This document shows, in pieces, positions 10,786-53,865 of a stretch of DNA of 64,000 nucleotides. The DNA is taken from the IMG/VR virus record IMGVR_UViG_3300018891_000001, positions 124,001 to 188,000 of that record; one strand, 5' to 3'. The notes beneath the pieces were generated by a model. The model ran no database searches. It was given only the letters and a program-made list of their open reading frames with translations, and was not told the origin of the DNA. Position 1 is the first letter of the stretch. The number at the start of each line of letters is the position of its first letter. The position numbers were made by a program, and so were the translations under genes.

Positions 10786-10863
10786 ATGGAATTAGTGCGT
10801 TCCTATCTTCAGAATTATGGAATCGTGGACTACATTATTATTTTCAAATTCACATTCAAATAA
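10786..10863 (+). CDS. Short ORF starting MELVRSYL (25 aa; possibly frameshifted)
   Basis: Strong RBS aaaggag; an overlapping frame continues to about 10950. Confidence 0.45.
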   Translation: MELVRSYLQNYGIVDYIIIFKFTFK

Positions 10864-10936
10864 GCGAATCTGGAAAACTACTCATTAAACCTTGTTGTAT
10901 CAACTCATATCATCCTCCAAAGGAGAGTGTTATCGT

Positions 10937-11188
10937 ATGGAATTAGTTCAACAATTATTGACAAAAAAGCAAGAAACAAAAAACAAAATTCAGCGATTAA
11001 AAGAAGAAGGGCTTTTGGTTCCTAAATCCATTACCATGAATGGAATTTATTCATCAGATAACTTAACATATGTTGGCCCCCTTGTAACTGGATCATTCTC
11101 AAGTCAATTAATAATTAATGATCAAGTGATTGGCAACGTCACTGTTACAGGAATGTCCCGGGAGGCGGAATACCAAACATGGAGATGA
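10937..11188 (+). CDS. Hypothetical protein (MELVQQLL...)
   Basis: RBS aggag; ATG 10937. Confidence 0.6.
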   Translation: MELVQQLLTKKQETKNKIQRLKEEGLLVPKSITMNGIYSSDNLTYVGPLVTGSFSSQLIINDQVIGNVTVTGMSREAEYQTWR

Positions 11189-11589
11189 TCAATAAATATA
11201 TCGAGCTTCACCGACCAGAAACATGGTATGAAAAAATGCTAAAGAACTTTTTCCGTTATCAATGGCAAACTCCTTCATACAAAAGAATTCTTTTACAGAA
11301 AATATATGAAGAAACAAAAGAACTAAAAGCAGAACTAGATGATTTCTATAATCGAACTAGATCTATGCCTAGAAGATCTGGGAAATCTTATTACTATAAT
11401 TCCATTTTATATGAGATTGCACAGAAAGAATTTGTGTGGCGCACAATCAAGTTACGATGGAACAATTTACGTAATGATCTTTTCATGGAGGAGAATGAAG
11501 ATGGAACTATGCCTTCAATATTTACTAATCCAATCTTCTCACAAACGACAAAAAGAATACGAGACCATCAAACAATTGGACCATATTAA
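11179..11589 (+). CDS. Hypothetical protein (MEMINKYI...)
   Basis: RBS ggagg. Confidence 0.65.
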   Translation: MEMINKYIELHRPETWYEKMLKNFFRYQWQTPSYKRILLQKIYEETKELKAELDDFYNRTRSMPRRSGKSYYYNSILYEIAQKEFVWRTIKLRWNNLRNDLFMEENEDGTMPSIFTNPIFSQTTKRIRDHQTIGPY

Positions 11590-11654
11590 AAAACATATTA
11601 CAAAGAAAGCGGAACGAGATTGGGATTTATTATTTAGGAGGTTGACAAGATCTG

Positions 11655-12389
11655 ATGGAACTGACCGTGAATGATTTATATGATTTTAAATCCTGTCCCT
11701 TACGTTTTAAATTGACTCGCATCGATAAAGTCTGCAAAGAAATCACCACCAATGATGGCATTCGAGAAGCATTGCAATCCGTGATAAATTATTATTATTT
11801 TCATCTGCAGCAAGGAAAACAGCTTTCAATTACAGATTTAAAAGAAAAGTTTAGCAGCATTTGGTATGGGAAACTTAATATCTATGACATTTACACAAAT
11901 AGTAAAACCGAACAACGAAAAAAGGAATTAGAAGCCATTGGTATGCTACATACGTTTTATCGTCAACAGCAATATGCACCTGATTATGTGATTGCTTCCA
12001 ATGTGGATTTCCGAGTTCCCTTTGGAAATGATTTTTATGTAAGAGGTAATCTTCCTGTCATTCGAGATACTCCAAGAGGCATTGAATTAGCGGTTTTTAA
12101 AATGGGAAAGCACAAATACAATGAGTTTTGGCAAAAAACCGATATGGGGCTTACTTTGATGGCCATGGCCTATCAATCCATGTTTAAGCAAGAACTCGAC
12201 AGTATCGCAGTCCATGTCTTGCGAGATGGTAGTACACTTTATGTGCAACGCAAAAAACAAGATTACAAGAGATTAATCAAAACCATCAATATGGTCAAAG
12301 AATCCATCGAAAAAGGGTGGTTGTATCCACGAGAAACTTATGCTTGTGATAAATGTCCTGCACAACATTTATGTATGGAATGGAGATGA
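11655..12389 (+). CDS. PD-(D/E)XK/RecB-like nuclease-fold protein, catalytic residues apparently missing
   Basis: YDFKSCPLRFKL and C-terminal CDKCPAQHLC; GNLPVI and ELAVFK where GxxD and DxK are expected. Confidence 0.6.
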   Translation: MELTVNDLYDFKSCPLRFKLTRIDKVCKEITTNDGIREALQSVINYYYFHLQQGKQLSITDLKEKFSSIWYGKLNIYDIYTNSKTEQRKKELEAIGMLHTFYRQQQYAPDYVIASNVDFRVPFGNDFYVRGNLPVIRDTPRGIELAVFKMGKHKYNEFWQKTDMGLTLMAMAYQSMFKQELDSIAVHVLRDGSTLYVQRKKQDYKRLIKTINMVKESIEKGWLYPRETYACDKCPAQHLCMEWR

Positions 12390-12395
12390 TATCAC

Positions 12396-12827
12396 ATGAG
12401 AAAATCTTGGAATCAATATTTCATGGAAATAGCAGAAATGGCTGCAACAAGAGCTACCTGTGACCGACTACATGTAGGGTGTGTTCTTGTTAAAAATCAT
12501 CGAATCATTGCAACAGGCTATAATGGAAGTATTAGTGGGCATGATCACTGTGAGGATATAGGTCACTTAATGCACGAAAACGGGTGTAAAAGAACCATTC
12601 ATGCCGAAATGAATGCTCTTTTACAGTGTGCTAAGCATGGAATTGCAACAGAAGGGGCTACGGCTTATGTCACTCATTATCCATGTCCAGATTGCATGAA
12701 ATCACTAAATCAAGCAGGAATTCAAACCATTTATTATAAGCATTACTATCCTCATCGCTACGAAAATAACTTTCATGAAGGAATGGAGGTGATTTCATAT
12801 GATGCTATTTCGGAAACTAATTTGTAA
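12396..12827 (+). CDS. dCMP deaminase (ComEB-like)
   Basis: HVGCVLV, ATGYNG, IHAEMNAL, PCPDC. Confidence 0.9.
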   Translation: MRKSWNQYFMEIAEMAATRATCDRLHVGCVLVKNHRIIATGYNGSISGHDHCEDIGHLMHENGCKRTIHAEMNALLQCAKHGIATEGATAYVTHYPCPDCMKSLNQAGIQTIYYKHYYPHRYENNFHEGMEVISYDAISETNL

Positions 12828-12960
12828 ATTCAAAGGACTTCATCATCCTGAATTTACAGGAAGCTATCATGTATTTGACTATGACTTCAAATATCCAAGG
12901 AAAATTCATGTTCATCGCTGTCCAAACTGTGGAGATTACAAAAAAATTATGGTGGATTAA
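12799..12960 (+). CDS. Small DUF1660-like protein (53 aa, not in ORF track)
   Basis: RBS ggaggtg; MMLFRKLICKFKGLHH...HRCPNCG. Confidence 0.6.
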   Translation: MMLFRKLICKFKGLHHPEFTGSYHVFDYDFKYPRKIHVHRCPNCGDYKKIMVD

Positions 12961-13048
12961 GTATGGAGATCGTATGTGAATAAACTGTATATCGTATGTT
13001 TGGAAAGAGATGATAAATGCATTATAAAAAGATTGTGGTGTGATATAA

Positions 13049-13624
13049 ATGGAATTGATTAAAGCATATCTTAATCTTCAATTTCAAAATGGGCGAATCA
13101 ACACATATGAATATATCAAAGACCACATTGGAAAGACACAATCCTTGTTACCGTCACATAATCAATTTGACCTTCGCCATTCAATTGATCCTTTTTTACC
13201 TGAAGGGTTTGAATGGATGCATGAATTGCAAGGCGGATTGATCATCCCTATTGAACAACCAAAAACAATGGAAAAATTACAACAAGAATCTGATATTCTA
13301 GAAAAAATGGCACATATGATAAAATGTGTATGGATGTTTATGGCCATTTTACTGATTATAACCAATCTTCTTGTATGGTTTTCAGGCACGAAATCACCAA
13401 TTGGGTTGATTATGTGGATCCCTTTTACTGCTGCTTATTATATCTACAGGTATTTTGAAAACAAGAAAGCAAAGATACAACAAACACTGGAAGTAAAAGA
13501 AATACAACGAATACTAGAAAAAGCGACAGCAGAAATCCTGGGAGAAACGACAGTAGAAATCCGAAGAACTGCACCAAGAGGTGTTAGACCTAGTTTGCAT
13601 TCTCCATCAAGAAGACATGAATAA
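13049..13624 (+). CDS. Hypothetical membrane protein (MELIKAYL...)
   Basis: Two predicted TM segments. Confidence 0.7.
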   Translation: MELIKAYLNLQFQNGRINTYEYIKDHIGKTQSLLPSHNQFDLRHSIDPFLPEGFEWMHELQGGLIIPIEQPKTMEKLQQESDILEKMAHMIKCVWMFMAILLIITNLLVWFSGTKSPIGLIMWIPFTAAYYIYRYFENKKAKIQQTLEVKEIQRILEKATAEILGETTVEIRRTAPRGVRPSLHSPSRRHE

Positions 13625-13699: not shown

Positions 13700-14599
13700 A
13701 TGGAATTTAAGTTAGCAAACTTTCAAGTTAAAGAAGTCATCCCCGCTTCTGCCTATCGTGATGATTATGTTGATTGGGGATTAAAAGCAGTTGGTGCAGA
13801 AATTGCTTGGCAAAAATCCAAAGGAAGAGGCATTAAAGTAGCGGTTTTAGATACAGGCATTGACCGTGACCATCGTGATTTAATTCAAAATGTGAGAGAA
13901 ACGATTGATTTTACAGGATCTCCATACGGAGCTGAAGATGTACAGGGTCATGGTACCCATTGTGCAGGTATTATCGCCGGTGTAGATAATCAGATAGGCA
14001 TGATCGGGGTAGCACCGGAAGTGGAAATTTATTCAGCTAAAGTATTGGGAGATAACGGTTCCGGTAGTTTTGAATCTATTATCAAAGGAATTCGATGGGC
14101 AATGACACATAATGTAGATGTCATTTCCATGAGCTTGGGAACTGCGACTCGACCACCACAAATATTGCATGATACGATTAAGCAAGCTGTTGCACAAGGC
14201 ATTATCCTAGTTGCCGCTACAGGGAATGAAAATAGTGCAGTATGTTATCCAGCAGCCTATGATGAAGTCATTGCCGTTTCTGCTGTAGACCAAAAACTAG
14301 AACGTGCTAAATTCTCTAACTTTGGTATTCAAAATGCGATTTCTGCACCAGGAGTGGATATTGTATCGACTTACAAAAATGGAACCTATGCCCGATTATC
14401 TGGCACTTCAATGGCCACTCCACTTGTAGCCGGTGCATGTGCCCTGATTATTGATCGATACAAGCAGCTTCATAACGGACTAAAGCCAAGCGTAGAGTAT
14501 GTGCATCAAACACTACTCACCATGGTCAAAGACTTAGGGGAAATAGGAAAAGATGAGCTATACGGAGCAGGAATGCTAAATTTGGCACTTCTTCCGTAA
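13700..14599 (+). CDS. Subtilisin-family (S8) serine protease, no signal peptide
   Basis: VAVLDTGID, HGTHCAG, AATGN, SGTSMATP. Confidence 0.93.
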   Translation: MEFKLANFQVKEVIPASAYRDDYVDWGLKAVGAEIAWQKSKGRGIKVAVLDTGIDRDHRDLIQNVRETIDFTGSPYGAEDVQGHGTHCAGIIAGVDNQIGMIGVAPEVEIYSAKVLGDNGSGSFESIIKGIRWAMTHNVDVISMSLGTATRPPQILHDTIKQAVAQGIILVAATGNENSAVCYPAAYDEVIAVSAVDQKLERAKFSNFGIQNAISAPGVDIVSTYKNGTYARLSGTSMATPLVAGACALIIDRYKQLHNGLKPSVEYVHQTLLTMVKDLGEIGKDELYGAGMLNLALLP

Positions 14600-14604
14600 A
14601 AATG

Positions 14605-18199: not shown

Positions 18200-19690
18200 A
18201 TGTGCCAAGGCATACACGTTCATGTACATAGTGAAGAAAGTTTGCTTGACGGATTATCAACTGTCAAACAGCTTGTTGCTAAAGCCAAAGCACTTGGACA
18301 TATTGCTTTAGGGCTTACCGATCATGGTGTGTGTGGAGCTATACCGGATTTTATTTCTGAGTGTCAGAAACAGGGTATTAAACCTATTCCGGGATGCGAG
18401 GTATACATGACCAAAAATCGTTTAATCAAAGGAAAAGAACTAGAAGAAATGCGTATCAAACTTTGCACCAAATACAAAATTACAGATCATAAAGGCAAGC
18501 CTAAGATGAAATTACTCCAAGATTTTCTTCGAAAAGTAGAAAAGAATTATGCTTGCTTTGAAGAAGAGGCTCGCATCCTATTAAAAGACTATCTCATGTC
18601 AAGTGACCCTGAACCCAAGGAGGAGTCACTTGATTTATTTTCCATCTATGAAATAGATTTTAATGAACCTCTAGAAGCGAAAAAAGCTCCCGATACTGTT
18701 GAAGAAAAAATAGAAGCTTTTAAAAAAGAAGTGTTTCACTACCTTGACTATGGTAATTTTCACATGGTGTTACTTGCCATGAATAATCAAGGACTGGAGG
18801 ATTTATATGAGATTGTTTCTGATGCTCATATTAATGGCTTCTATTCTGATCCTCGTACCGACCTTGATTTTATTCGAGAAAGAGGTCTGGGCAGGAATCT
18901 TATTGCTACTTCAGCCTGTCTTGGGAGTTATTTTAGTCAGCTCTGTTTGGCAGGAAGAATTGAAGAAGCGAAACAACATATTTTAGAATGCAAAGAAACC
19001 TTTGCACATTTTTATTTAGAAAAACAGGCTACCTCTATCCCCGAACAACTTTATATTAACCAAATCATTGATCAATTAGCCGTTGAAACCAATACACCGA
19101 AAATTCTCACCACAGACGTACACTATGCCAATAAAGAAGACAATCACATTCATGATATCCTTGTTACATCTTCTATTGGTAAGTGTATCTCTGATGAAAA
19201 CCGTATGAAATACGCCCATGAATTCTGGATGAAAAATGACGAAGAAATGATGGAAAAATGTTACGATCCAGAAGCATGGGGGAATACACTAAAAATTGCT
19301 GAAATGGTCAATGTTTCCTTACCGAAGGAGCCATTATTTCCAAAATTCTTGATTGAAGGAAATGAAACGGCTGATGAACTATTGAGAAAGAAAGCATGGA
19401 ACGGTTTATTCGAAATGGCATTAACCGAAGATATTGATATTCAAGAATACTCTCGAAGACTCCAATATGAACTGGATGTTATTTGTACAGAAGGATTTTC
19501 AGATTATTTCTTGATTACCGAAGATAAAATGAGAGCCACAAATGAAGCCGGCTTTTTAACAGGTCCGGGGCGTGGTTCGGGTGCAGGCTCACTCGTATGT
19601 CGATGCCTCAAAATTACTGCACTGGATCCGATTAAAGAAAACCTACTATTTGAGCGTTTCCTAAATCCAGAACGTGCTGGATATCCTGAT
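18200..19690 (+). CDS. dnaE: DNA polymerase III alpha, exon 1 (PHP domain and start of polymerase domain)
   Basis: HVHSEESLLDG, TDHG, SACLGS, GPGRGSGAGSLV, FERFLNPERAGYPD; the join 18200-19690 + 21004-21683 + 23092-24451 is 3531 nt and in frame. Confidence 0.9.
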
Positions 19691-21003: not shown

Positions 21004-21683
21004 CTCGATATTGATTACTCATATGATGGAGCACGATGGGTACAAATGTACTTAAAAGAAAAATACGGGCATGATAAAGTTGCACAAATTGGAACCAAAG
21101 GAACGTTAGCAGCAAGAGCCGTCATCCGTCGTGTCGGAAAAACATTAGGATTAGAAAACGCCACAGTGGATGCTTTTGCAAAATCGATTCCTTCCCGTCC
21201 TGGTATTACATTAAATGAGGCTTATGCTGAAGAACCAATGGTACAGCAATATGCACAAACTTATCCGCAGTGGTGGGAAGCGGCAAAAGCATTAGAAGGT
21301 CATATTAGTCAAGTCGGAGTTCATGCCGGAGGAATTGTCTTATCTCCTGTTCCTCTCACCAAAGTCACTCCACTTCGCTTGGATAGTGAAGGACTTGAAA
21401 CAACCCAATATGATATGAAGTGGATTGAAAAATTCCTCGTCAAATTTGATATTTTAAAACTCGATACGCTGGACTTGATTAAAAAGACGATGGAGTTTGC
21501 AGGTATTTGGGGAACGATGGATCCGTATCGAGATATTGATGTTAATGATCCAAACATCTATAAAAATGTGTATAATCAACTCAATTTATCTGGTATCTTC
21601 CAGTGTGAATCCGATCTGTTTCGAAAAATTATTAATGATATGAAACCCAACTCTTTTGCTGATATTTCGGTTATTGTTGCCCT
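21004..21683 (+). CDS. dnaE: DNA polymerase III alpha, exon 2
   Basis: LDIDYS, VAQIGT, GVHAGGIVLS, LVKFDILKL, GIFQCES. Confidence 0.9.
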
Positions 21684-24577: not shown

Positions 24578-24910
24578 ATGGAGCTCGTTCAACAATACTT
24601 ACGGATGCACTGGGCCTATTATTTTTGGATAGCCGACCAAGAACATACCATTTGGTATATTGTTCATCAAGGGATTACATTAGAACCTTGTCCTATTTAT
24701 CTTAATACTTATAATGCTTCGATTCGAATGTTGAAGGAGCATTATGAAGAAATCACAGAACAAGCATATGGATGGCAAAATCGATACCCTAAAATTGTTC
24801 GTATGAATCAATTAAAAGAAGTGGAGGCCTTTGAAATGATTTGGAAAGGTGTCTCTTATGAAGATGATATCGTTATTATTCACTGTAAGGCGAAATGGAT
24901 GACGGAGTGA
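24578..24910 (+). CDS. Hypothetical protein (MELVQQYL...)
   Basis: RBS aggaggt before ATG 24578. Confidence 0.7.
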   Translation: MELVQQYLRMHWAYYFWIADQEHTIWYIVHQGITLEPCPIYLNTYNASIRMLKEHYEEITEQAYGWQNRYPKIVRMNQLKEVEAFEMIWKGVSYEDDIVIIHCKAKWMTE

Positions 24911-24919
24911 AAAAGTTAT

Positions 24920-25033
24920 ATGGATTTAGTAAAAATGTATTTAGAACAAACCGATAAAGAACAAAAATATAACCCATTAGGAAACCAACAAGGAATACTA
25001 TCTTTTCAGGATACGCACGTTTTATTCCATTGA
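24920..25033 (+). CDS. Short ORF (MDLVKMYL..., 37 aa; possibly frameshifted)
   Basis: RBS ggagtg; not in ORF track. Confidence 0.45.
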   Translation: MDLVKMYLEQTDKEQKYNPLGNQQGILSFQDTHVLFH

Positions 25034-25163: not shown

Positions 25164-25679
25164 ATGGAGCTGACAATAGAATATCTAAAATATTATATCA
25201 AAGTGAATCAAGCCTTAAAAAATCAAAATCAATTATTTGTAAAGCTAATGAATACAGATGATCCTATTTTTATTCCATCAAAAAAATATCCAAGCGATGC
25301 CGGATATGATTGTCGGGCTCGAATTGAAGAATCCATTACTTTGCAACCGGGAGAACGAGTTCGTATTCCACTTGGATTTGCTATAAATATTCCATTACAC
25401 TATACAGGCGATTTACGTCCACGAAGCGGATTAACCTGGAATCACGGTATTATGGTAGGATATGGTACAATTGATCCGGGTTATACAGGAGAAGTGATGG
25501 CTACGATTTTTAATTTCAGCCAAGAACCTTTTACCATTCAACCAAAAGACCGTATTGCTCAATTAGTTATTTTGCCAACAATCCATAGCAATGATGAATT
25601 CATTACATTACAACCAGTCAATGAATTAGTAGAACTAGACCGTGGAGACAAAGGACACGGAAGCACAGGAATCCAATAA
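25164..25679 (+). CDS. dut: Trimeric dUTPase
   Basis: DAGYD, RPRSG, GTIDPGYTGE, RIAQL, RGDKGHGSTG. Confidence 0.92.
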   Translation: MELTIEYLKYYIKVNQALKNQNQLFVKLMNTDDPIFIPSKKYPSDAGYDCRARIEESITLQPGERVRIPLGFAINIPLHYTGDLRPRSGLTWNHGIMVGYGTIDPGYTGEVMATIFNFSQEPFTIQPKDRIAQLVILPTIHSNDEFITLQPVNELVELDRGDKGHGSTGIQ

Positions 25680-40575: not shown

Positions 40576-40908
40576 TTAGAAATCAAACAAAGTCCCTTGA
40601 TAGTTTTCCATAATTATATTATGTTCACTAGTTTCTGCCTCTGCAGCGGATTCTTTAGGCTGAGAAATTTCTTTTAAATTGATTCGAAAGATACAATGAT
40701 CGTCTTTGAATTTTTTGTGTATACAATCTTCCGGCTGAATTTCTACTTGAATCGGATACATATGATGCACATAAAGCAACGGGTAATCAATATAAGTAAC
40801 CGTGGCATATCCGGTATAGTAATCGGAAGAAACATACACCACATCTCCCGTTTGGGGTATATTATAAGAATTCAATACTAACCGCTCCTTTAGAATTTGC
40901 AAACTCAA
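40576..40908 (-). CDS. Hypothetical protein
   Basis: Operonic ORF. Confidence 0.6.
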   Translation of the reverse strand: MSLQILKERLVLNSYNIPQTGDVVYVSSDYYTGYATVTYIDYPLLYVHHMYPIQVEIQPEDCIHKKFKDDHCIFRINLKEISQPKESAAEAETSEHNIIMENYQGTLFDF

Positions 40909-41116
40909 AAACAGACATCACGTTTTTAATATCGTCTGTTTCATCGGTAACAAATGCTAGGATCCGATGCAATTTCGGATCTTCTGCAAAAACCGGCTCA
41001 ACAAATACAAAATAAAACGAATGTTGCACATATACCGATAAATTATATTGTGTCGTATCTATATCCCGAAATAACGATACACTTCGAAACAAGTCATAGC
41101 TTTGTATAAGCTCCAT
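40862..41116 (-). CDS. Hypothetical protein (MELIQSYD...)
   Basis: RBS aggtgag. Confidence 0.6.
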   Translation of the reverse strand: MELIQSYDLFRSVSLFRDIDTTQYNLSVYVQHSFYFVFVEPVFAEDPKLHRILAFVTDETDDIKNVMSVFEFANSKGAVSIEFL

Positions 41117-43738: not shown

Positions 43739-45067
43739 TTATTCGACTTCTTGAAAATCGGATTCAAACGGATTAAACTCAAATTCTGGAATGCCTTGGA
43801 AATCTTCAATTTCCACTGGCGCATTATAATTAATTTGAACGCTTCGTACTGGAACATAAAGCTGCACACAATCTGGGTTTCCATTATTTAGTAAGCCTTT
43901 AAATGGTTGAATACCTGACGGTTTATTTGGCGCAGACGGCAAAAACTCAAAACGAATATAATCGTCATTGTTGTAGCGAGAAAGAGCTTCTTGTAAATAA
44001 CGAACATTGACCGCTACAATCACATCAGCCCCTTTTCCTTCCGTAGTAGAAATATCTTGCTGGAATGAACCAACTTCTTGTTCACGAGTATTGACTCGCA
44101 TTTGATTAAGTTCTGGTTTGATACGAATAATAATCGGCTCATCCGTATTATAAACCGTAGAGTTATTGAGCAATTCCTTAAATGAACCAGCATGAATTAC
44201 TACTGAACTTGCAGATTGTGATGAGTCAAAAATCAAACGATCTGTATCTGGATAATTTCCTTCTAATAATCGAGCATATAATGTAACATCTTCAAACTCA
44301 TAAACCACTTGAGTTGGATAAAAGTGAAGAATGACTTCTACTTCAGTTGCATCTAAGTGTTTTTTCACTTCTTGTAATACCGCTGCTGGCACAGTCATTT
44401 CCACATTTGTATGTTCTTCATCCAATTCGTAAACGTACTGACTTAATCGATGAGAGTCAGTGGCAACACATTTAATAACACTGCCAGAAATCTTATGAAA
44501 GACTCCTGTTAAAATCGGGCGTGTTTCTTTAGTGGATACCGCATAAACCGTATGATCATAAATACGACTTAATACATCTGGATGAATAGAAACAGAAGTA
44601 ATCTTTTCACCTAAATCCGGTGTACGTGGAAATTCATGTCCATCTAATCCGTGTAAATCAAAAGTTGGGCGACCCGATTTGATAACAGCCACTTTATCAT
44701 GAATACGTATCTCAGTATTTTTGTGATTCAGTTTCTTGACAATTTGAATAAATTTATCGCCCGGAAAACAAATGGAACCCGGCTTTCCTTCTGTAATTTT
44801 AAAATTCGTTCCTTCTTTATTTTGAGTTGCTACAGCTTCTGTTAAGTAATCGTTATTAATGCCACGGAAAATCAAACGATCTTCTTGAATTTCCATGTAA
44901 ATGAATTTATAAATTTCCTGTACGGCCTTTTTCGCTACAGAACGTTCTACTTTGCTTACCAGTTTCTTGAGCAAATCTGTTTGAATTGCTAATGCCACAT
45001 GAGTTTTTAATTCCTCTTCAATTTCTTGATCAATTTTTTCTACATCAATACCTTGTAATTCTAACAT
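43739..45067 (-). CDS. dnaN: DNA polymerase III beta sliding clamp with N-terminal extension
   Basis: AVSTKETRPILTGV, VATDSHRLS, RLLEGNYPD, VNVRYLQEAL. Confidence 0.9.
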   Translation of the reverse strand: MLELQGIDVEKIDQEIEEELKTHVALAIQTDLLKKLVSKVERSVAKKAVQEIYKFIYMEIQEDRLIFRGINNDYLTEAVATQNKEGTNFKITEGKPGSICFPGDKFIQIVKKLNHKNTEIRIHDKVAVIKSGRPTFDLHGLDGHEFPRTPDLGEKITSVSIHPDVLSRIYDHTVYAVSTKETRPILTGVFHKISGSVIKCVATDSHRLSQYVYELDEEHTNVEMTVPAAVLQEVKKHLDATEVEVILHFYPTQVVYEFEDVTLYARLLEGNYPDTDRLIFDSSQSASSVVIHAGSFKELLNNSTVYNTDEPIIIRIKPELNQMRVNTREQEVGSFQQDISTTEGKGADVIVAVNVRYLQEALSRYNNDDYIRFEFLPSAPNKPSGIQPFKGLLNNGNPDCVQLYVPVRSVQINYNAPVEIEDFQGIPEFEFNPFESDFQEVE

Positions 45068-47311: not shown

Positions 47312-49753
47312 TTATAAAGCAAAGAGGTCTAGCTCCTGTTGCCCCTCAATAACTTGCTTCCGCTTTGGTACACCCTTATTGTATTCTCTAACGTTTTCTA
47401 CTTTCTTGATGACAGAATCAAACATGGATAAATAATCGTCAATGGCTTTACGAGTCCGACGAACATCTTCTTTTGTTGCACGACCGACCTTTGCTTCTTC
47501 TTCTACAAAGCGAATCAATCCTTGAGCAATCTTACGTACTGTATCAATACCGCCTTCAATTGGATTCATGATATAACCTTCATAATCCTGAAACTCCACA
47601 GCTTGCATTTCCTCAAAGGACTGATTTTTGCGGGCAAAGATATCATGTACCGTTTCAATATCTTCAAAGACATTATCATTAAGGAGCTGTTTGGCTAATG
47701 CATTCATGCCGTCAGAACTATCTGCCATGGCACGCAATCCTTCTTCAGAGAATTTTCCTTGCATAGCCATAGCTGCATCAATTTTGCGAGCAATATGTTT
47801 GAGAGCTTTCTCTTGAATCGTATCACGATACACATAGGTGTATACTTTTACATCTTTCGTTTGTTTGAGTCGCCATGAACGACGAGAGGCCTGCATGTAA
47901 TCATATGTGGAATAATCCAATTGGAAAAAGTGGATATTTGGAAAAGCAAGTAAATCTAATCCAACTTTCACCAATCGTGGATTGGTAATAAGAATGTCCC
48001 AATCGTGTTTCTCCATCATTCCATGAAGCCATTGTTCCCGTTGTTGAGAATTCTTTGGCATTCGAATCCCGTCATAGCTTCCACCATTTCGAAGAATTCC
48101 TACATTATAACCTCGACGTTTGAATTCTTCATACAAGTAAATATCCACTTGATTCCATGCTTCTTTTCCGGTGTATTTGACATAAATCAGATTCTTGCGA
48201 CCATGCTGATAAATTTCATCATCAATAATGCGGATCAATTGTTCTACTTTTCTTGGCACAAAATTTACTGGATCAAAAGTACGAGGAACTCCAAGAATAT
48301 GACGATGTCCATCTTTATCATATGTGACAATTTCTTCTACATTAAATGGTGTATCCGCATACTGATACATGGCATTGATAAAGGTAGAAATACTATTCAT
48401 GCCACCTAACCCTTCTGTTGAACGCATGGTTACGGCGACATCATGTGCAATTTGTCGATAAGCATCATGGTGTTCAGAACTCATATCTACCACTACCGGG
48501 ATTTCTCGATATGGCGGTAATGCATATCCCATGTCATTTAGTTCTAAGAAGGCACAATTATTCATCAGATGCATCGGGAATAAATGTGGTGAAATACCTG
48601 GTTTTTGTGAAGTCGTACGACGAATGCGACCATCTCGTGCACGAGTACTTCGCTCATTAATTCCATATCGACGATTAAAGAGTGATTCATCTTGATACGT
48701 AATGCCTTCCCGAAGAAGTCCTTTTGGATTTAAGCGAGCTAGTAAATAAAAAATATCTCGAGCCATTCCACCCATTAATGTCCCCGTTAGCAAAATTTGT
48801 TTTTCAGTATGGTTCACTAATTGGCCAAATGCAGTACCTGTTGTAGAATCTCCACTTTTGTACTCATGAACTTCATCAGCAATTAGGTATTTAAAGAATC
48901 CTCTTGGTAATTTCTTATTGATATACCAAGCTGGAGATACTTTTCGATATCCAGAATCCAGTGGAAGTTTTTCTGGCTGCCATAATACATATCCGCATTC
49001 TTGTTCCTCATCTGCCGGCACCCAACGATTACTATTGTAATCCAACTTCCATTCCTTAATTTCCTCTTTTGGTAAAAGAGAAGTTGGAACTTTGTTTCGG
49101 CAGCGATAATTTTCTTTGGTCATATTCTTTACCCAGTTCTTTGATGACTTGTTGTAAGTTTCAAAGAAATGTTCTTCTGCATATTCACCGCCACGTTCGA
49201 ATAATGGATTCCCACACTTTGGACAATAAAAACTGGTTTCGCCTACCGAATAAAACACATCAGGTCTTCCGCTCTCATAATTCCAGACTTCGTTTCGAAT
49301 CATGCGAACACGATACTCAGGATGAACAACTTGATGCATGCCATCTCCTCGTCGAACATGTCGAATTTGTTCAGGTTCTACGTCCTCTACAGAACGGAAT
49401 GTAATATCAGATTTATGAACACGCCAATCTTTGATAGGCTCCATCGGATAAGTAAACTTGGACAACTCAGAGCTCATGATGTAATATTCCCATTTCTCCG
49501 GTTTCTTGTATTTTATTTTTCCTTTTGCATCCATGTATTGGTTTTGTTCCTGGATTCGTTTTACGTCTAACCAATGTTGAATAATATGTGTTTCTACATT
49601 CGGTATTCGTTCTTTAATTTCCCGTGCCCATTTTTCTACCATAATGGAAGGACACAGGACAATAACCCGCTGTGGTTGAGGATTGGTTTCTACGTTTTGC
49701 AGCATTGCTTCTGTGATGTATGGAACTACTTCACCCATTGTGGTTTTACCTGT
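47312..49753 (-). CDS. SF2 (SNF2/DEAD-like) helicase, exon 2
   Basis: TGKT, IVLCP, LIADEVHEYK, LLTGT, GLDL, QASRRSWR. Confidence 0.85.
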   Translation of the reverse strand, partial: TGKTTMGEVVPYITEAMLQNVETNPQPQRVIVLCPSIMVEKWAREIKERIPNVETHIIQHWLDVKRIQEQNQYMDAKGKIKYKKPEKWEYYIMSSELSKFTYPMEPIKDWRVHKSDITFRSVEDVEPEQIRHVRRGDGMHQVVHPEYRVRMIRNEVWNYESGRPDVFYSVGETSFYCPKCGNPLFERGGEYAEEHFFETYNKSSKNWVKNMTKENYRCRNKVPTSLLPKEEIKEWKLDYNSNRWVPADEEQECGYVLWQPEKLPLDSGYRKVSPAWYINKKLPRGFFKYLIADEVHEYKSGDSTTGTAFGQLVNHTEKQILLTGTLMGGMARDIFYLLARLNPKGLLREGITYQDESLFNRRYGINERSTRARDGRIRRTTSQKPGISPHLFPMHLMNNCAFLELNDMGYALPPYREIPVVVDMSSEHHDAYRQIAHDVAVTMRSTEGLGGMNSISTFINAMYQYADTPFNVEEIVTYDKDGHRHILGVPRTFDPVNFVPRKVEQLIRIIDDEIYQHGRKNLIYVKYTGKEAWNQVDIYLYEEFKRRGYNVGILRNGGSYDGIRMPKNSQQREQWLHGMMEKHDWDILITNPRLVKVGLDLLAFPNIHFFQLDYSTYDYMQASRRSWRLKQTKDVKVYTYVYRDTIQEKALKHIARKIDAAMAMQGKFSEEGLRAMADSSDGMNALAKQLLNDNVFEDIETVHDIFARKNQSFEEMQAVEFQDYEGYIMNPIEGGIDTVRKIAQGLIRFVEEEAKVGRATKEDVRRTRKAIDDYLSMFDSVIKKVENVREYNKGVPKRKQVIEGQQELDLFAL

Positions 49754-50849
49754 CGATACCTTCTAGGTCGGGAATTTAACCCAACCACTCCCCTTTCGGA
49801 GAGGACGAGACTATATCATCACTCAGGCTCGGAGACAGCCTTCATCGTGTCGGGCGCTCGTGTCGGGTTTATTGGTCGGCATCCTCACCCGTTAGTCGTT
49901 GAACCTTCCTAGCTACTCAAGTGCCATTCGCTAGGCTTGGCTGCTGATTGCCATATCCTTTCGGACTTAGGTTTCCAGCAATTCACCCGATTTTACATGG
50001 GCTACAGGATAATGTTTTCGTTCCAGATAAATCGTTGCATTGTTGTAGAGGAAATTTACAAATTTCGCATACAATCCATTTCCACCGAATCGATAACCAA
50101 ATGCTCTTCCATTCTCTTTGTATTTTTCTCTTAGTGGCAATCCGTGTTCATGTAGAACTTTGGAATAAGCATCTAGGAATTCTTTTGTACCAATCACTTC
50201 TATATTCACTTGAGGTCTGGAATTATCTCTCGGATCATAGAAGTAATGAATGCTTCCATCTCCATCGAAATATCCTCTCATAAAATGATGCAATAAATGA
50301 TGTGGCACTTGCTCTTCTGTTGGGAATTGCAAGGTCAATGATTTGGCAGGCGTACAGCCTTTATCAATTAAATCCTGTACAATTTCCATCGATACGAGTT
50401 GTAATCGATAGCATAGATGACCATTCACGTTTCTTGGTTTGATGTCCATTTCAGGAGAGATAAAATCTCGAAATCGCTCAAGATGATTAACATCTTTTTC
50501 AGATAAGCTTAGTTCCAATGTTCCCCGTGGTTCATAAACTGAGCCATCGGCATATAAGAAGCCTAACCAATATGCTTTTTCCTCGGTATCGATTACTTTA
50601 AACGCATCGGTGTTGTGATTGTATTTACTTCTTCCTGTTGTCATCCCTCTGGATTTTATCTGTATCCCATCTGCTTTTAACATTTGGGATAATTTCTTGC
50701 GGTCAAAACCTGTGAGCTCTGAAATCTTTCTCAACGATTTACCTTCCAAAAACATTTGCTTTGCCATTTCATACATGTTATCACTCCCATAGGTATATTT
50801 CCTATACCCATAATAACATGCTATGAAATGCATTACGACCTGTTTGTTA
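49754..50849 (-). mobile_element. Group I intron 3, splitting the SF2 helicase Walker A, HEG in P1 loop
   Basis: P1 atgggt/gcccat with U.G; P10 cctgt/acagg; gaattgctggaaac, aatcagcagccaag, gttcaacgacta, gatatagtct; removal restores GEMG|TGKT. Confidence 0.92.
49967..50776 (-). CDS. Intron-encoded LAGLIDADG homing endonuclease
   Basis: YWLGFLYADG, FMRGYFDGDG; start ATG 50776 with RBS gggagtg. Confidence 0.9.
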   Translation of the reverse strand: MYEMAKQMFLEGKSLRKISELTGFDRKKLSQMLKADGIQIKSRGMTTGRSKYNHNTDAFKVIDTEEKAYWLGFLYADGSVYEPRGTLELSLSEKDVNHLERFRDFISPEMDIKPRNVNGHLCYRLQLVSMEIVQDLIDKGCTPAKSLTLQFPTEEQVPHHLLHHFMRGYFDGDGSIHYFYDPRDNSRPQVNIEVIGTKEFLDAYSKVLHEHGLPLREKYKENGRAFGYRFGGNGLYAKFVNFLYNNATIYLERKHYPVAHVKSGELLET

Positions 50850-51824
50850 ACCCATTTCTCCAACGATAAAACAAAAATCATCTTCCACCAATGTTTTAGA
50901 AACACCCATAACAGTATTGGCTTGCGGTGGATATAGACCTGTAATTCCTTGCTGATTGGCACATAAATTCACATCACGAAAAGCGGGATGATGTCGTTCT
51001 TTCTCCGGATCAAAACGAACAGCAATATTCTCTTGGATACGTTTTCCTAGCTCTGGTGCAAAGTGAGTTAAATAATCATCAATCGTCTGACAATGAGGTA
51101 ATATGGATTGACTTTCATCTCGGCCATCTTCTTCAATTGCAAAGTTTAACTCATATCCTTGAACTCCTTCTGAGATAATGTTTTCTAGCTGTTCTTCTGT
51201 AATCATAAGAAGTCCTGCTTCTAGAGAATAATTGGAACCAAAACACTTCACGGTAAGAGGTGTATAATAACCTTCCTCTTCTAGTCGTTCGACAATATAA
51301 TCAGTCCATTCCTCTAGCATTGGTGTATTATATCGGTCATTCAGAACATGAAACACTTGTTTTTTGTAATTACCATCCCATGCCAAAATGAGTTCAGCTA
51401 AATGGCTTGGAATAGATTCTGGATCTAGACCTTGATTGATTCGTTCTCTTTGTTCTGCTAACCATTGATTACGTGCTTTTAAATCTGGTTTTGCATTTTT
51501 GGCCACCATCAAAATATGAGTTAAATCATCAACTTTTAATACCTCTTCATCATACGGCTTTTTAGACGTAGGAATAGCAAAAACACTATGACGAATAAAT
51601 CCTGTTTCGTATCGATTTCCTTCAGCACGATAAATTTGTCCCGTTTTTCCATCTTGCATAAGCCATGCGGCTTGCTTTACTTTGGAATCCACACCAATCA
51701 AATTGGCTAAATAGATGACATTATCGCTATCTGTCACAAGTAGATCACAATAGGCTATGCCGCTTGAAGAATGACGGTTATACATTTCTAATGTATATAT
51801 TTCCGGCATATAAAGGCGTGGCAT
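50850..51824 (-). CDS. SF2 helicase, exon 1
   Basis: RBS gaggtg; ends LYPPQANTV...CFIVGEMG. Confidence 0.85.
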
Positions 51825-52035
51825 TTCTTTCACCTCTTTGTTTGTATTTTTTAGGCTTCCCATATTTTGATTTCATTTCTTATCCATCGTTTTTCAATAT
51901 TTCGTTGATGTTTATTACGGCGACGCTTATCTTTCCCTTTTACTCGTGGTGTTGGGTATTGCCCATCTTTTGTCCAATCCCAGTTACCATATGTTTTATT
52001 GGTTTCAATTTTAATTTGACGGTACATGTAATCAC

Positions 52036-53421
52036 CTACATGATTTTTCGGAATTGTCCTTTGGCATCTAAGATTTTTACGCCAATATTGTAAAATTCTC
52101 GTTCTACAACTTTGGTTAAGCCATCATCATCGGTTTCTGTAAATTCACGAACATCTTTAATGGCACTTCCTTTTACAAGATGCTGATCGGGTCCAGTGCC
52201 AATATATCCATTCAAAAATCCGGATGTGAGTAATAACATGATATGTCCTTTATGAAGTGGAGATGGTGTCACAGGATTATAGTTATTAAAAACTTGAGAA
52301 TTCTTCTCTTGATATACTTGCAATAACTTGGATTTTTGAAGGGATAATAAAGCTTCGCTTCCCGTAACCGGACCTACTCGGAATGATTGAATTTCATCTG
52401 GATGACAAGCCGGAACCTCATAAATAGGCTCCAATTGTGGTTCAATTACTCCATACATAGCATCCACTTTAGCTCGGAAGACTTGCTTTTCATATTGTTC
52501 ATGTCCTTCAGGAACTGTAATTTCACGAATCTTTCCAAAAGACTTATAAGGTCGTTCTTTGGTTCGAGCAATGGCCTTTCCTAATTCATAATGTTCTCGA
52601 GTCGCTTTCTTTCGTTTTTTGGCTAAGATAATGCATTTTCGATATTCAAGATATTCATCATCATCCAAACGGAGGATTCTAATATCTTCGTACTGATTCA
52701 CCAATTTAAAAGCAATCGTATCGTCAATAAATTCTTTTGGAGTAATCATGATTAAAATACCACCTGGGCGCAGGTATGTAGTTGCTCGTTGCAGCAGAAA
52801 CGCATCCCATCGCATGCTAGACATTTTCTTTTGTTGCTCTTTCATGGCCATGCGCCATGCTTTCACACGTTTTTCTAATTCGGCACGAATTTTTCTTTCA
52901 ATCCGCTCTTGACGCTGCTCTTCTGTTTCTTGGTCTTTCCGTTCGGTGTTATCTTCATTTAGTGCGCCAAAATCAATTTGCTTAGAAATTTGAGCTTGCA
53001 GTCGCTTCTTTTCTTCTTCTTGACGCAAGACTTGTTCTCGAATTTCTTTTTCAAAATTTGGCATATTATATGGATCAATCTGCTCAAACACTTCATGAAT
53101 CAATCGATCATCAACATAAGGATGAACCACCATAAGAGAGAAAACATCATTGGTGATCTTAGCTTCAGAGCGATAATCGGATTGGGAAACACGATAATAG
53201 GAATAAGTGTTTCTCATAGAATCACAATCCGCTGGTAATTCATCTACTCCATATAAAAAACGTTGGTCATGTTTTGAAGTTAACTGATGAAGAAAAGACC
53301 CATTGAAAGCTCTCCAGTCCATAGCAGTAATAGGTTGACCTTCCGGAAATTTTAAATACATTTGCAGCAATTTGGTTGTATATTGACTAAGCGGATGATT
53401 AATTTTCCATGGTTGTGACAT
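52036..53421 (-). CDS. SAM-dependent DNA methyltransferase-like protein (DUF6094-like), degenerate
   Basis: LYGVDE, LMVVHPY in place of NPPY, YLRPGGILIMITP. Confidence 0.6.
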   Translation of the reverse strand: MSQPWKINHPLSQYTTKLLQMYLKFPEGQPITAMDWRAFNGSFLHQLTSKHDQRFLYGVDELPADCDSMRNTYSYYRVSQSDYRSEAKITNDVFSLMVVHPYVDDRLIHEVFEQIDPYNMPNFEKEIREQVLRQEEEKKRLQAQISKQIDFGALNEDNTERKDQETEEQRQERIERKIRAELEKRVKAWRMAMKEQQKKMSSMRWDAFLLQRATTYLRPGGILIMITPKEFIDDTIAFKLVNQYEDIRILRLDDDEYLEYRKCIILAKKRKKATREHYELGKAIARTKERPYKSFGKIREITVPEGHEQYEKQVFRAKVDAMYGVIEPQLEPIYEVPACHPDEIQSFRVGPVTGSEALLSLQKSKLLQVYQEKNSQVFNNYNPVTPSPLHKGHIMLLLTSGFLNGYIGTGPDQHLVKGSAIKDVREFTETDDDGLTKVVEREFYNIGVKILDAKGQFRKIM

Positions 53422-53436
53422 ATTCTCATCTCCTTT

Positions 53437-53865
53437 TTAATGATGATAATCAACACATGTATACAAGTCTTCATAAACTTGATCAATGACTTCCATTGGT
53501 ACACCTGCATTCAGTAAACCTGTCACATTTTTTAAAGTCGGACCATGATATGTTTTTACATCTTTCCAAGAATCTGTACCATCAAGGGTTTCGATGGCTT
53601 CGCATTCAGTCACTATAAATGGACAGGGCGAACTTAATGTATATACCATAGATTCATCTGCATTTACTCCCTTGTATTCAAATCGAATCAAAGCTCGATA
53701 CCATTGACCCTCTACTTGAATACGTTTGTTTAGCATATAGAATTTCTGATTAGAACGACTATCCGTGTACCATCCTTTTCGTTTTAAGAAATGAAAGGTT
53801 CGATTGCTAATATTATTGGTTTCAATGGAAATACGATTACAGAGGTAAAGACGAATTAATTCCAT
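53437..53865 (-). CDS. Hypothetical protein (MELIRLYL...)
   Basis: RBS aaggagag; operator-like palindrome at 53881-53896. Confidence 0.7.
   Translation of the reverse strand: MELIRLYLCNRISIETNNISNRTFHFLKRKGWYTDSRSNQKFYMLNKRIQVEGQWYRALIRFEYKGVNADESMVYTLSSPCPFIVTECEAIETLDGTDSWKDVKTYHGPTLKNVTGLLNAGVPMEVIDQVYEDLYTCVDYHH

What the first reader, a model, noticed from the sequence alone, without database searches (positions are those of the whole stretch)
10786..53865. Shared N-terminal peptide M[ED]L[VIT]xxYL on unrelated proteins
Seen: six ORFs with no other visible similarity begin this way: MELVRSYL (10786), MELIKAYL (13049), MELVQQYL (24578), MDLVKMYL (24920), MELTIEYL (dUTPase, 25164) and MELIRLYL (53865, minus). 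Near matches are MELVQQLL (10937), MEMINKYI (11179) and MELIQSYD (41116, minus). Codons vary synonymously (gaa/gag; tta/ttg/ctc/ctg; tat/tac; ctt/tta/cta/ctc), which points to selection on the peptide rather than copying of a DNA cassette. On the dUTPase it appears to be an added helix ahead of the enzyme core. Three of these genes directly follow an operator-bearing promoter. Inference: a portable tag, such as a capsid-targeting or ejection signal (analogous to the T4 internal-protein CTS), a degron or cleavage site (the element encodes a cytoplasmic subtilisin), or a docking helix for a common hub. I know no named system matching it.
Basis: partly seen in the sequence, partly recalled or inferred. 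Interest (0 to 1): 0.8.

Follow-up and report, generated by a model that had tools for sequence, protein, structure and literature searches.

The report
Shared N-terminal tag on phage-plasmid proteins
About ten otherwise unrelated genes of a ~216-kb Bacillus-type phage-plasmid begin with the same eight-residue peptide (Met-Glu-Leu-Val/Ile/Thr-x-x-Tyr-Leu); relatives keep it by selection on the protein, so it looks like a common address or docking tag whose receptor is still unknown.

Summary
All six strict and three near matches sit at the stated coordinates, at ribosome-binding-site-preceded starts. [ED]L[VIT]xxYL occurs 7 times in all six frames of the window, and 6 of those directly follow a start Met. 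In 2.8 Mb of unrelated phage and Bacillaceae DNA the Met-prefixed form occurs twice, never at a gene start (Poisson p about 1e-11).

Across 32 instances the third codon positions and the Leu codon families vary freely, so selection acts on the peptide. With the N-terminus masked, the carriers fall into at least 8 unrelated families.

The window is the replication and nucleotide-metabolism module of a ~216-kb element. Its relatives are 200-260-kb Bacillus, Priestia and Paenibacillus phage-plasmids. In those relatives the orthologues keep the motif better than the rest of the protein, and variable gene slots hold different small genes that all start with it.

The motif is absent from 47 structural-module N-termini of pSCDB14, from 100 kb of SPbeta and from 40 kb of pBtic235.

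Best reading: a short N-terminal docking helix that routes diverse non-structural proteins to one partner (confidence 0.4). A T4/P1-style capsid-targeting signal, a degron and an inherited 5' relic remain rivals. No named system matches.

The parts
10786..10863 (+). 25-aa ORF starting MELVRSYL. Probably a 5' remnant or mini-gene in the variable slot between the RNR gene and the PD-(D/E)XK nuclease gene.
   Evidence: Translation and AAAGGAG site. Scores 15.2 bits with the relatives-only matrix. Not called as a gene in public assemblies.
10937..11188 (+). 83-aa ORFan starting MELVQQLL. Near match: Leu replaces the Tyr at position 7.
   Evidence: Called as an 83-aa gene. 9.7 bits. No Pfam, PHROG or NCBIfam hit.
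11179..11589 (+). 136-aa ORFan starting MEMINKYI. Near match. The public call starts two codons later.
   Evidence: pSCDB14 has MEMTKLYNEVH at the equivalent slot.
11501..11674 (+). 57-aa alternative-frame ORF starting MELCLQYL behind GGAGGAG. It overlaps the end of the 136-aa ORF. Whether it is a gene is uncertain.
   Evidence: ELVSQYLLIQ occurs inside a 63-aa gene at the same slot of pSCDB14.
13049..13624 (+). 191-aa membrane protein (family E) starting MELIKAYL. It lies between the dCMP deaminase and S8 peptidase genes.
   Evidence: Hydrophobic segment at residues 86-115. Positional orthologues start MELVKVYLDL, MELIKVYLDL and (GTG start) ELVREYLAL. The C-terminal half is 29% identical to the pSCDB14 orthologue.
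24578..24910 (+). 110-aa ORFan (family C) starting MELVQQYL, downstream of the split PolIII-alpha gene.
   Evidence: AGGAGGT site. Called as 110 aa. The orthologues are 28-41% identical yet keep ELVxxYL, twice displaced inward by 4-5 residues.
24920..25033 (+). 37-aa ORF starting MDLVKMYL. It sits where relatives have a 142-158-aa gene (family D). Probably a truncated remnant.
   Evidence: Relatives there start MELIQEYLQL, MELVQKYIDI, MNLVEKYIDL and MNLIEEYLSI.
25164..25679 (+). dUTPase (171 aa) with an extra N-terminal helix (residues 2-21) that starts MELTIEYL.
   Evidence: PF00692 from residue 36. AF2 places a helix at residues 2-21 with pLDDT 80-92. Solved dUTPases align only from residues 22-37. 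Of the 29 sequences in alignment A1 (this protein plus 28 homologues at 58-75% identity), 22 have Glu2 and 27 Leu3, and Tyr7 and Tyr10 are invariant. The alternative start at 25098 lies upstream of the -10 box and operator.
40862..41116 (-). 84-aa ORFan starting MELIQSYD. Near match.
   Evidence: 10.8 bits.
53437..53865 (-). 142-aa protein (family A) starting MELIRLYL. It is the first gene behind a promoter with an exact operator, and is followed by a DUF6094 methyltransferase-like gene and a SNF2 helicase gene.
   Evidence: 24 cluster representatives at E<=1e-10, most of which start MEL[ILV]xAY[LIM]. Motif residues show 0.615 pairwise identity against 0.317 for the rest. AF2 pLDDT is 93.6 overall, with helix 2-9 at about 72 followed by coil.

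Best explanation
The peptide M-[E/D/N]-L-[V/I/T]-x-x-Y-[L/I/M] is a lineage-specific short linear motif. It forms a two-turn N-terminal helix: an acidic or N-cap residue at position 2, hydrophobic residues at 3, 4 and 8, and a nearly invariant Tyr at 7. A helix breaker or linker usually follows.

The motif has been attached to, and kept on, at least eight unrelated non-structural protein families of one clade of ~200-kb Bacillaceae phage-plasmids. I propose that it works as a docking peptide. The helix inserts its Leu/Val/Tyr/Leu face into a groove of one common partner, encoded by the element or the host. A dUTPase, a membrane protein and a set of fast-evolving small proteins would thereby be brought to the same place or machine during the element's replicative phase.

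Shown: the motif exists, is specific to N-terminal regions, is selected at the amino-acid level, is carried by unrelated families, is more conserved than the bodies of the small proteins, and is confined to non-structural genes of this clade.

Inferred: that it binds something, that the partner is shared, and what the partner is.
For: Specificity to gene starts and enrichment.

Peptide-level selection: in 32 instances the information sits at codon positions 1-2 and is low at most third positions (0.01-0.9 bits). Leu3 and Leu8 use both TTR and CTN codons.

Unrelated carriers: BLASTP with the N-terminus masked links only orthologues.

Conservation above background. In family A the motif residues show 0.615 identity against 0.317 for the rest, rank 10 of 134 windows. 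Families C, D and E are 27-41% identical or undetectable outside the motif, yet keep E-L-[VI]-x-x-Y-[LI]. In the dUTPase the motif residues are about as conserved as the enzyme core (0.61 against 0.645), with Tyr7 invariant.

Helix then linker: AF2 places helix 2-9 then coil in family A, at lower confidence than the body, and helix 2-21 in the dUTPase, which no solved dUTPase has.

The exact N-terminus is not required. Two family C orthologues carry the motif 4-5 residues in (MEGKELVTCYL, MKKKNELVNQYL). This fits a binding helix better than an N-end signal.

Charge and hydrophobicity: net charge 0 or -1 in 7 of the 9 window peptides tested (+1 in two), and only a modest hydrophobic moment. This argues against a membrane anchor and for protein-protein contact.

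Distribution: none among the 47 structural-module N-termini of pSCDB14.

Lineage restriction: none in SPbeta, none in 40 kb of pBtic235, none at gene starts in the two backgrounds.
Against: No partner has been identified, and no tool here can test binding.

Family A keeps the motif where no other nearby gene has it: L179, and L180 next to a type I restriction system. For that family the helix may therefore serve the protein's own fold or function rather than a shared hub.

The dUTPase helix is older than the motif. Distant homologues have an extension with Ala6, Tyr7 and Tyr10 but no Glu-Leu at positions 2-3.

The AF2 confidence for the dUTPase helix (80-92) suggests it may pack on the enzyme rather than being free.

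The hydrophobic moment is not significantly higher than in shuffled peptides.

Only about 84 kb of this element and one complete relative were fully surveyed.
Confidence: 0.4

Rival explanations
1. Capsid-targeting or ejection signal of the T4 CTS / P1 DarB type. The tag would bind the prohead scaffold so that diverse effector proteins are packaged and injected with the DNA. A head protease might remove it.
For: [quoted passage not shown]

The T4 N-termini were read here: IPII and IPIII start MKTYQEFIAE, IPI starts MKTFKEFTST, and Alt starts MELITELFDE. Alt shares M-E-L-I and the hydrophobic register 3, 4, 7, 8.

T4 alt.-1 is a 5' duplicate remnant, like the ORFs at 10786 and 24920 here.

P1 is also a phage-plasmid, and it packages DarB through its first 30 residues (PMC9024508).

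Family A is always followed by a methyltransferase-like gene (DUF6094) and a SNF2 helicase gene, a domain pair like that of DarB.

The relatives carry portal, major head and tail sheath genes.
Against: T4 Alt scores only 3.8 bits with the motif matrix and lacks the invariant Tyr, and the internal proteins score negative.

No conserved residue or cleavage motif follows the tag.

The carriers include a membrane protein and a dUTPase.

The genes sit in replication and nucleotide operons behind operator-controlled promoters, not in the late module.

None of the 47 structural-module proteins has the tag.

Family A keeps the motif on a contig with no phage gene in 13.6 kb.
Confidence: 0.2
2. Degron or cleavage site. 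The tag would mark early proteins for timed turnover, either by the element's cytoplasmic S8 (intracellular-subtilisin-like) protease or by a host AAA+ protease.
For: An S8 peptidase without a signal peptide is conserved in every relative. It lies directly downstream of tagged family E. Its best named match is the mycosin model, below that model's cut-off. Tyr-Leu would suit a subtilisin P1/P1' site (general knowledge of subtilisin specificity, not tested here).
Against: pBtic235 and many other plasmids have the S8 gene, yet the 40 kb around it in pBtic235 contains no tagged start.

A housekeeping dUTPase whose tag is about as conserved as its core is an odd degradation target.

The tag lacks the basic residue of the published ClpX N-terminal motifs (recalled from Flynn et al. 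2003, not re-read here).

The motif tolerates a displacement of 4-5 residues.
Confidence: 0.1
3. An inherited relic without a shared function. New small genes would arise by capturing the ribosome-binding site and first codons of a neighbour, through tandem 5' duplication or microhomology recombination in variable slots. The helix would be kept only because it is a good N-terminus for each protein separately.
For: Carriers are clustered: 4-5 lie within 10786-13049 and 3 within 24578-25164, with runs of 3-4 consecutive genes in relatives. There are 5' remnants at 10786 and 24920. The slots between the RNR and nuclease genes hold different genes in the window and in pSCDB14, all starting ME[LM]. 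In family A and the dUTPase the helix looks intrinsic to the family.
Against: Neutral inheritance cannot explain amino-acid identity persisting while codons are saturated. Nor can it explain motif conservation far above that of the protein bodies in families C, D and E. The longest shared nucleotide run is about 9 bases, which is too short for homologous recombination. A generally good N-terminus should also appear at Bacillaceae chromosomal and other phage gene starts, and it does not.
Confidence: 0.12
4. A translation-level signal. The first codons, or the nascent octapeptide, would tune initiation or early elongation, for example as a regulated arrest peptide. This would compensate for the rather weak Shine-Dalgarno sites of several carriers.
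For: Several carriers have weak sites (GGTG, GAGGG, GGAG). The motif is exactly at the start in most cases. AUG-GAR creates a GGA triplet, and relatives encode CsrA.
Against: Third positions and Leu codon families vary freely, so an RNA motif is excluded. The MNL variants lack the GGA triplet. Carriers with strong sites exist (24578 has AGGAGGT). A nascent-peptide effect would not explain why the motif is conserved when displaced 4-5 residues inward.
Confidence: 0.05

Closest known systems
T4 capsid targeting sequence (CTS) of internal proteins IPI, IPII, IPIII and Alt
   Same: A peptide of about 10 residues at the extreme N-terminus is the only thing shared by otherwise diverse, fast-evolving phage proteins, and 5' duplicate remnants exist (T4 alt.-1). 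The hydrophobic register is similar, and Alt starts M-E-L-I.
   Different: The sequence is not significantly similar: Alt scores 3.8 bits and the internal proteins score negative, and T4 has no invariant Tyr7. No cleavage motif is visible after the tag. The carriers here include a dUTPase and a membrane protein and lie in replication operons. The host and phage lineage are different. Packaging is untested.
P1 DarB N-terminal packaging signal (Dar anti-restriction system)
   Same: Both elements are phage-plasmids, and in P1 the first 30 residues direct cargo to the capsid (PMC9024508). Tagged family A is linked to a methyltransferase-like gene and a helicase gene, the domain pair of DarB.
   Different: Here the methyltransferase-like and helicase proteins themselves lack the tag. 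The P1 signal is not described as a motif shared by many families. No homology to the Dar proteins was tested.
Encapsulation peptides of bacterial microcompartments (N-terminal helices on Pdu/Eut enzymes)
   Same: A short N-terminal helix plus linker is appended to unrelated enzymes and acts as a docking signal (my knowledge, not re-read here).
   Different: No shell-protein gene is annotated in the complete relative pSCDB14. The helix here is shorter (8-10 residues) and carries an invariant Tyr.
N-terminal degrons and short linear docking motifs of bacterial hubs (ClpX N-motifs, beta-clamp-binding QL[SD]LF)
   Same: Portable short peptides are recognised by a hub protein. The element encodes its own beta-clamp at 43739-45067.
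   Different: The tag has no basic residue as in the ClpX N-motifs, and no conserved Gln-Leu-x-Leu-Phe pattern. Position 5 is Gln in only 11 of 32 instances.

Membership tests
T4-type capsid targeting sequence | A conserved peptide of about 10 residues at the N-terminus is the only similarity among diverse proteins | tested here: met
   At least 8 unrelated families share M-[EDN]-L-[VIT]-x-x-Y-[LIM].
T4-type capsid targeting sequence | Sequence similarity to the T4 CTS (MKTYQEFIAE for IPII and IPIII, MELITELFDE for Alt) | tested here: not met
   The T4 N-termini were read from NC_000866. With the motif matrix Alt scores 3.8 bits, IPIII -7.4 and IPI -12.6.
T4-type capsid targeting sequence | The tag is followed by a prohead-protease cleavage site and removed on maturation | tested here: inconclusive
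   No conserved residue follows position 10 across families. The head protease of these elements was not identified: two genes lie between portal and major head protein, of which the 407-aa one had no PHROG hit and the 444-aa one was not searched.
T4-type capsid targeting sequence | The carriers are present inside virions | not testable with these tools
   This needs virion proteomics. Only indirect arguments against it are available: a membrane protein and location in replication operons.
Bacterial microcompartment encapsulation peptide | Co-occurrence with shell-protein genes | tested here: not met
   No shell-protein product appears among the 216 annotated features of pSCDB14, nor in the Pfam lists for the window.
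Sec/Tat signal peptide | A basic n-region followed by a hydrophobic h-region of 10 or more residues | tested here: not met
   Net charge is 0 or -1 in 7 of 9 window peptides (+1 in two). Only four hydrophobic positions occur before polar or helix-breaking residues.
ClpX N-terminal recognition motifs | A basic residue within a hydrophobic N-terminal pattern (as recalled from Flynn et al. 2003) | tested here: not met
   Position 2 is Glu, Asp or Asn in all 32 instances, and there is no conserved basic position. The definition of the motif comes from memory.
Beta-clamp-binding motif | QL[SD]LF or QLxLxL consensus | tested here: not met
   Gln at position 5 occurs in 11 of 32 instances. Position 7 is Tyr, not Leu or Ser.
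Trimeric dUTPase (PF00692), for the gene at 25164 | dUTPase domain over the whole core | tested here: met
   PF00692 E 1.2e-28 over residues 36-169. The best PDB dUTPase hit has E 9e-26. The N-terminal helix 2-21 lies outside the domain.

The most novel reading that the evidence does not exclude
A clade of ~200-kb Bacillaceae phage-plasmids uses a private eight-residue N-terminal address code (M-E-L-phi-x-x-Y-L). The code is read by a single, still unidentified receptor and routes a changing repertoire of unrelated proteins to one destination: an enzyme, a membrane protein and many fast-evolving small effectors. That destination could be a replication or nucleotide-synthesis factory, or the capsid interior for co-injection. 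It would be a Gram-positive counterpart of the T4 CTS with a different sequence, and could be used as a portable tag.
Probability: 0.3. Interest if true: 0.85.

Novelty: new variant of a known kind. Interest (0 to 1): 0.7.

Why it matters
Short linear motifs shared by unrelated proteins are rare and informative in phages. The T4 capsid-targeting sequence revealed how effector proteins are delivered and became a protein-packaging tool.

Here the tag gives a handle on about ten ORFans per genome that have no other annotation. Finding the receptor would assign them all to one pathway at once. It would also explain why a dUTPase carries an extra helix, and it could yield a portable tag for Bacillus phage engineering.

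The work also defines a little-studied group of 200-260-kb phage-plasmids in Bacillus licheniformis, B. thuringiensis, Priestia and Paenibacillus. If instead the tag proves to be an inherited 5' relic, it documents how new phage genes are born by capturing the start of a neighbour.

Tried and rejected
Chance or host-like N-terminal bias: rejected.

Copied DNA cassette or promoter cassette: rejected. Only 3 of about 11 operator-bearing promoters precede tagged genes, and the operator-to-start distance and sequence differ. Codons are saturated at third positions.

Hidden common domain: rejected by BLASTP with the N-terminus masked. There were no Pfam, PHROG, NCBIfam or PADLOC hits for the small carriers.

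Wrong starts: rejected for 24578, 25164, 13049 and 53865, using public gene calls, ribosome-binding sites and homologue lengths.

MELTVNDL at 11655 (PD-(D/E)XK nuclease): not counted as an instance. It lacks Tyr7 and scores 5.3 bits.

Searches that gave nothing useful:
- A word-indexed search with the 191-aa protein found only itself.
- The genome-contig scan with the dUTPase alignment found nothing.
- Family A alignments were too divergent for locus scans.
- The fold search for family A gave no hit at E<=0.001; the best was YugN-like at TM 0.46.
- The ESM Atlas search on the N-terminal 22 residues was uninformative.
- The hydrophobic moment was not above that of shuffles.
- No RNA runs exist, and the DNA comes from biocrust metagenomes.
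- Literature searches found no description of this motif or of pSCDB14.

Full report
WHAT THE WINDOW IS

The 64-kb window (37% G+C) is the replication and nucleotide-metabolism part of a ~216-kb element assembled several times from biocrust metagenomes. The contigs are 215,870 to 215,936 bp.

It encodes DnaB, an 845-aa ribonucleotide reductase, dCMP deaminase and a cytoplasmic S8 peptidase. It also encodes RusA, a sigma-like protein, a split PolIII-alpha, dUTPase, an amidase and guanylate kinase. Further genes include an FtsK-like ATPase, Fic/Doc, a small acid-soluble spore protein, a beta-clamp, a SNF2 helicase, DnaG, UvrD and ThyX.

No cultured phage is close. The relatives are 200-260-kb records filed as plasmids of Bacillus licheniformis, B. 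paralicheniformis, B. halotolerans, B. thuringiensis and Paenibacillus. Similar contigs occur in Priestia megaterium and B. thuringiensis assemblies.

The complete relative pSCDB14 (205,480 bp) carries terminase, portal, major head and tail sheath genes together with ParM. The group is therefore a family of phage-plasmids. pBtic235, an inducible 235-kb jumbo prophage-plasmid (PMC9700832), is a more distant member: its S8 peptidase is 54% identical.

THE OBSERVATION

I added a tenth candidate at 11501.

The motif is specific to gene starts. [ED]L[VIT]xxYL occurs seven times in the six-frame translation. Six of these directly follow a Met that has a Shine-Dalgarno-like site upstream, and the seventh contains stop codons. 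The binomial p is 1.2e-9.

Two backgrounds were used. The first is 1.29 Mb of unrelated phage contigs that were fetched because they carry a dUTPase. The second is 1.55 Mb of Bacillaceae chromosome fetched through the spore-protein gene. Together they contain the Met-prefixed motif twice, in 16- and 26-aa ORFs without a ribosome-binding site. The Poisson p for six in the window is 1.1e-11.

To avoid circularity I trained a position matrix on ten family representatives from relatives only. It scores 6 of 343 candidate starts in the window at 8 bits or more. The corresponding counts are 2 of 9,013 for the phage background and 2 of 8,018 for the chromosomal background (Fisher p 1e-8).

The refutation criterion 'frequency matches background Bacillaceae N-termini' is therefore not met.

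PEPTIDE, NOT NUCLEIC ACID

In 32 instances from the window and relatives, the information content is 1.5-2 bits at the first two positions of codons 1, 2, 3 and 7. It is low at most third positions (0.01-0.9 bits). Leu3 uses TTA, TTG, CTG, CTT, CTC and CTA. Three instances use TTG or GTG as the start codon.

This is the signature of selection on amino acids. It rules out a copied cassette, an RNA operator and a recombination linker. The longest shared nucleotide run is about nine bases.

The palindromic operator TGTAATGCATTACA marks about eleven promoters. Only three of them precede tagged genes, so the tag is not part of the promoter cassette.

ARE THE STARTS RIGHT?

Public gene calls agree for 10937, 13049, 24578, 24920, 41116 and 53865.

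The dUTPase was called from 25098. That ATG lies upstream of the -10 box and operator. Homologues are 171-173 aa long, and most start M-E-L-T-Q-A-Y-L. 25164 is therefore the start.

The ORFs at 10786 (25 aa) and 24920 (37 aa) are probably remnants. Relatives have a 142-158-aa gene where 24920 sits.

UNRELATED CARRIERS, CONSERVED TAG

With the first 14 residues removed, BLASTP links only orthologues. At least eight families result:

- Family A: 142 aa, the gene at 53865.
- The dUTPase.
- Family C: about 113 aa, the gene at 24578.
- Family D: about 150 aa.
- Family E: a membrane protein, the gene at 13049, with a hydrophobic segment.
- Family F: 73-81 aa.
- Several singletons.

None has a Pfam, PHROG, NCBIfam or PADLOC match.

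Within families the tag is the best-kept part. Family A has 24 cluster representatives at E<=1e-10, most of which start MEL[ILV]xAY[LIM]. Its motif residues show 0.615 pairwise identity against 0.317 for the rest.

Family C orthologues are 28-41% identical and family D orthologues barely alignable. Family E orthologues are 29% identical in the C-terminal half only. All keep E-L-[VI]-x-x-Y-[LI].

In the dUTPase the tag residues are about as conserved as the catalytic core (0.61 against 0.645). Tyr7 and Tyr10 are invariant in 29 sequences.

Two family C orthologues carry the motif four to five residues in from the start. The helix, rather than the free N-terminus, therefore seems to matter.

Variable slots hold different small genes in different genomes, and most of these begin with the tag or a near match. 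One slot lies between the RNR and nuclease genes, and the other between PolIII-alpha and the dUTPase.

DISTRIBUTION

In pSCDB14, seven starts score above 10 bits and two or three more are near matches. All lie in the non-structural half. None of the 47 structural-module N-termini has the tag.

The 10 kb on either side of the window adds none. SPbeta has none in the 100 kb scanned. pBtic235 has none in the 40 kb around its S8 gene. A Paenibacillus plasmid has family A plus one near match in 58 genes.

Family A keeps the tag even where it is the only carrier. This includes a contig where it lies beside a type I restriction system.

STRUCTURE

AlphaFold2 on family A (pLDDT 93.6) gives a helix at residues 2-9, then coil to residue 18. 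The first ten residues are the least confident block apart from the two-residue C-terminal tail (about 72). The fold has no significant PDB match.

The dUTPase model has an extra helix at residues 2-21 (pLDDT 80-92). Solved dUTPases align only from residue 22 onward.

The peptides have net charge 0 or -1 in seven of the nine tested (+1 in two), and only a modest hydrophobic moment. This does not fit a membrane anchor.

MECHANISM

The combination points to a short linear docking motif read by one partner. The elements of that combination are a short helix plus linker, an invariant aromatic residue and portability across unrelated folds. Conservation is also stronger than in the protein bodies, and the motif is restricted to one lineage and to non-structural genes. 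I give this 0.4, because binding and the partner are inferred, not shown.

The capsid-targeting version (0.2) has the best precedent. T-even internal proteins share only their CTS (PMC3012670). I read IPII and IPIII as MKTYQEFIAE, IPI as MKTFKEFTST and Alt as MELITELFDE from the T4 record. P1, which is a phage-plasmid, packages DarB by its first 30 residues (PMC9024508). Family A is always followed by a DUF6094 methyltransferase-like gene and a SNF2 helicase gene, the DarB domain pair.

Several points count against it. The Alt resemblance is not statistically supported at 3.8 bits, and no cleavage motif follows the tag. A membrane protein and a dUTPase are odd cargo. The genes also sit in replication operons.

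A degron read by the S8 protease (0.1) is weakened by pBtic235. A relic of 5'-end capture (0.12) explains the clustering and the remnants, but not the purifying selection. A translational effect (0.05) is contradicted by the codon data.

NOVELTY

I found no description of this motif in the literature, and none of the protein-family libraries searched has a model for the carrier families. I file it as a new variant of a known kind, namely N-terminal address peptides shared by diverse phage proteins. It is not a member of the T4 CTS family, because sequence similarity was tested and not met.

LIMITS

Only about 84 kb of the ~216-kb element and one complete relative were surveyed. The small families have few sequences. 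No experiment or multimer modelling was possible.

Noticed in passing
window 5452, 7788, 10687, 13645, 16901, 19710, 25128, 29938, 43717, 45122, 53882: The perfect palindrome TGTAATGCATTACA has 4 exact copies and 23 matches with up to 3 mismatches, against 6.3 expected. It sits just downstream of TATAAT-like -10 boxes in front of about eleven operons. It is probably the operator of one repressor that controls the whole replication module.
   Followed up: partly
window 18200-24451: The PolIII-alpha gene is in pieces of 504, 246 and 406 aa, separated by a LAGLIDADG ORF (19779-20717) and an HNH ORF on the other strand (21966-23042). Relatives have one intact gene of 1170-1188 aa. Introns or inteins with homing endonucleases are likely.
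   Followed up: no
window 47312-51863 (-) and 58270-60732 (-): The SNF2 helicase is split around a LAGLIDADG-containing ORF; relatives have one gene of 1072-1139 aa. The UvrD helicase is split into 261 + 369 aa with a gap of about 570 bases; relatives have 650-662 aa. These are further candidate intron or intein insertions.
   Followed up: no
window 47312-53865 (-): A conserved three-gene module consists of tagged family A, a DUF6094 methyltransferase-like protein (461 aa) and a SNF2 helicase. It is found in all relatives examined. Family A alone lies beside a type I restriction system in L180. The domain content recalls the P1 anti-restriction protein DarB.
   Followed up: partly
window 13700-14599 (+): This is a cytoplasmic S8 peptidase with no signal peptide. 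Its best named match is the type VII secretion mycosin model (205 bits, below the cut-off of 279). It also matches the PADLOC 'subtilase' model (3.9e-30) and, weakly, the anti-phage IetS models. It is conserved in 93 large Bacillales plasmids.
   Followed up: partly
window 7404-7676, 37555-38145, 42264-42449: Accessory genes in the window include a Tad2-like protein (PF11195, an anti-Thoeris family), a Fic/Doc-family toxin-like protein (TIGR01550 2e-15) and an alpha/beta-type small acid-soluble spore protein.
   Followed up: no
window 7844-10381 versus pSCDB14 108624-112005: The window has a single 845-aa ribonucleotide reductase with a C-terminal Cys-rich tail. pSCDB14 and pBtic235 have class Ib NrdE/NrdF (plus NrdI in pBtic235) at the same place. 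The reductase type has therefore been replaced within the family.
   Followed up: no
window 11179-11674: Two ORFs overlap out of frame: a 136-aa ORF, and a 111-aa ORF whose internal start at 11501 has a strong ribosome-binding site and the tag. In pSCDB14 a second, internal copy of the motif (ELVSQYLLIQ) lies near the C-terminus of a 63-aa gene that itself starts MEMTKLYN. This is possibly a frameshifted or rearranged gene pair.
   Followed up: partly
L087/L088 (Priestia megaterium PRKV01000003.1, both contig ends): The same dUTPase region appears at both ends of a 225,526-bp contig. This is consistent with a circular or terminally redundant molecule assembled with an overlap.
   Followed up: no
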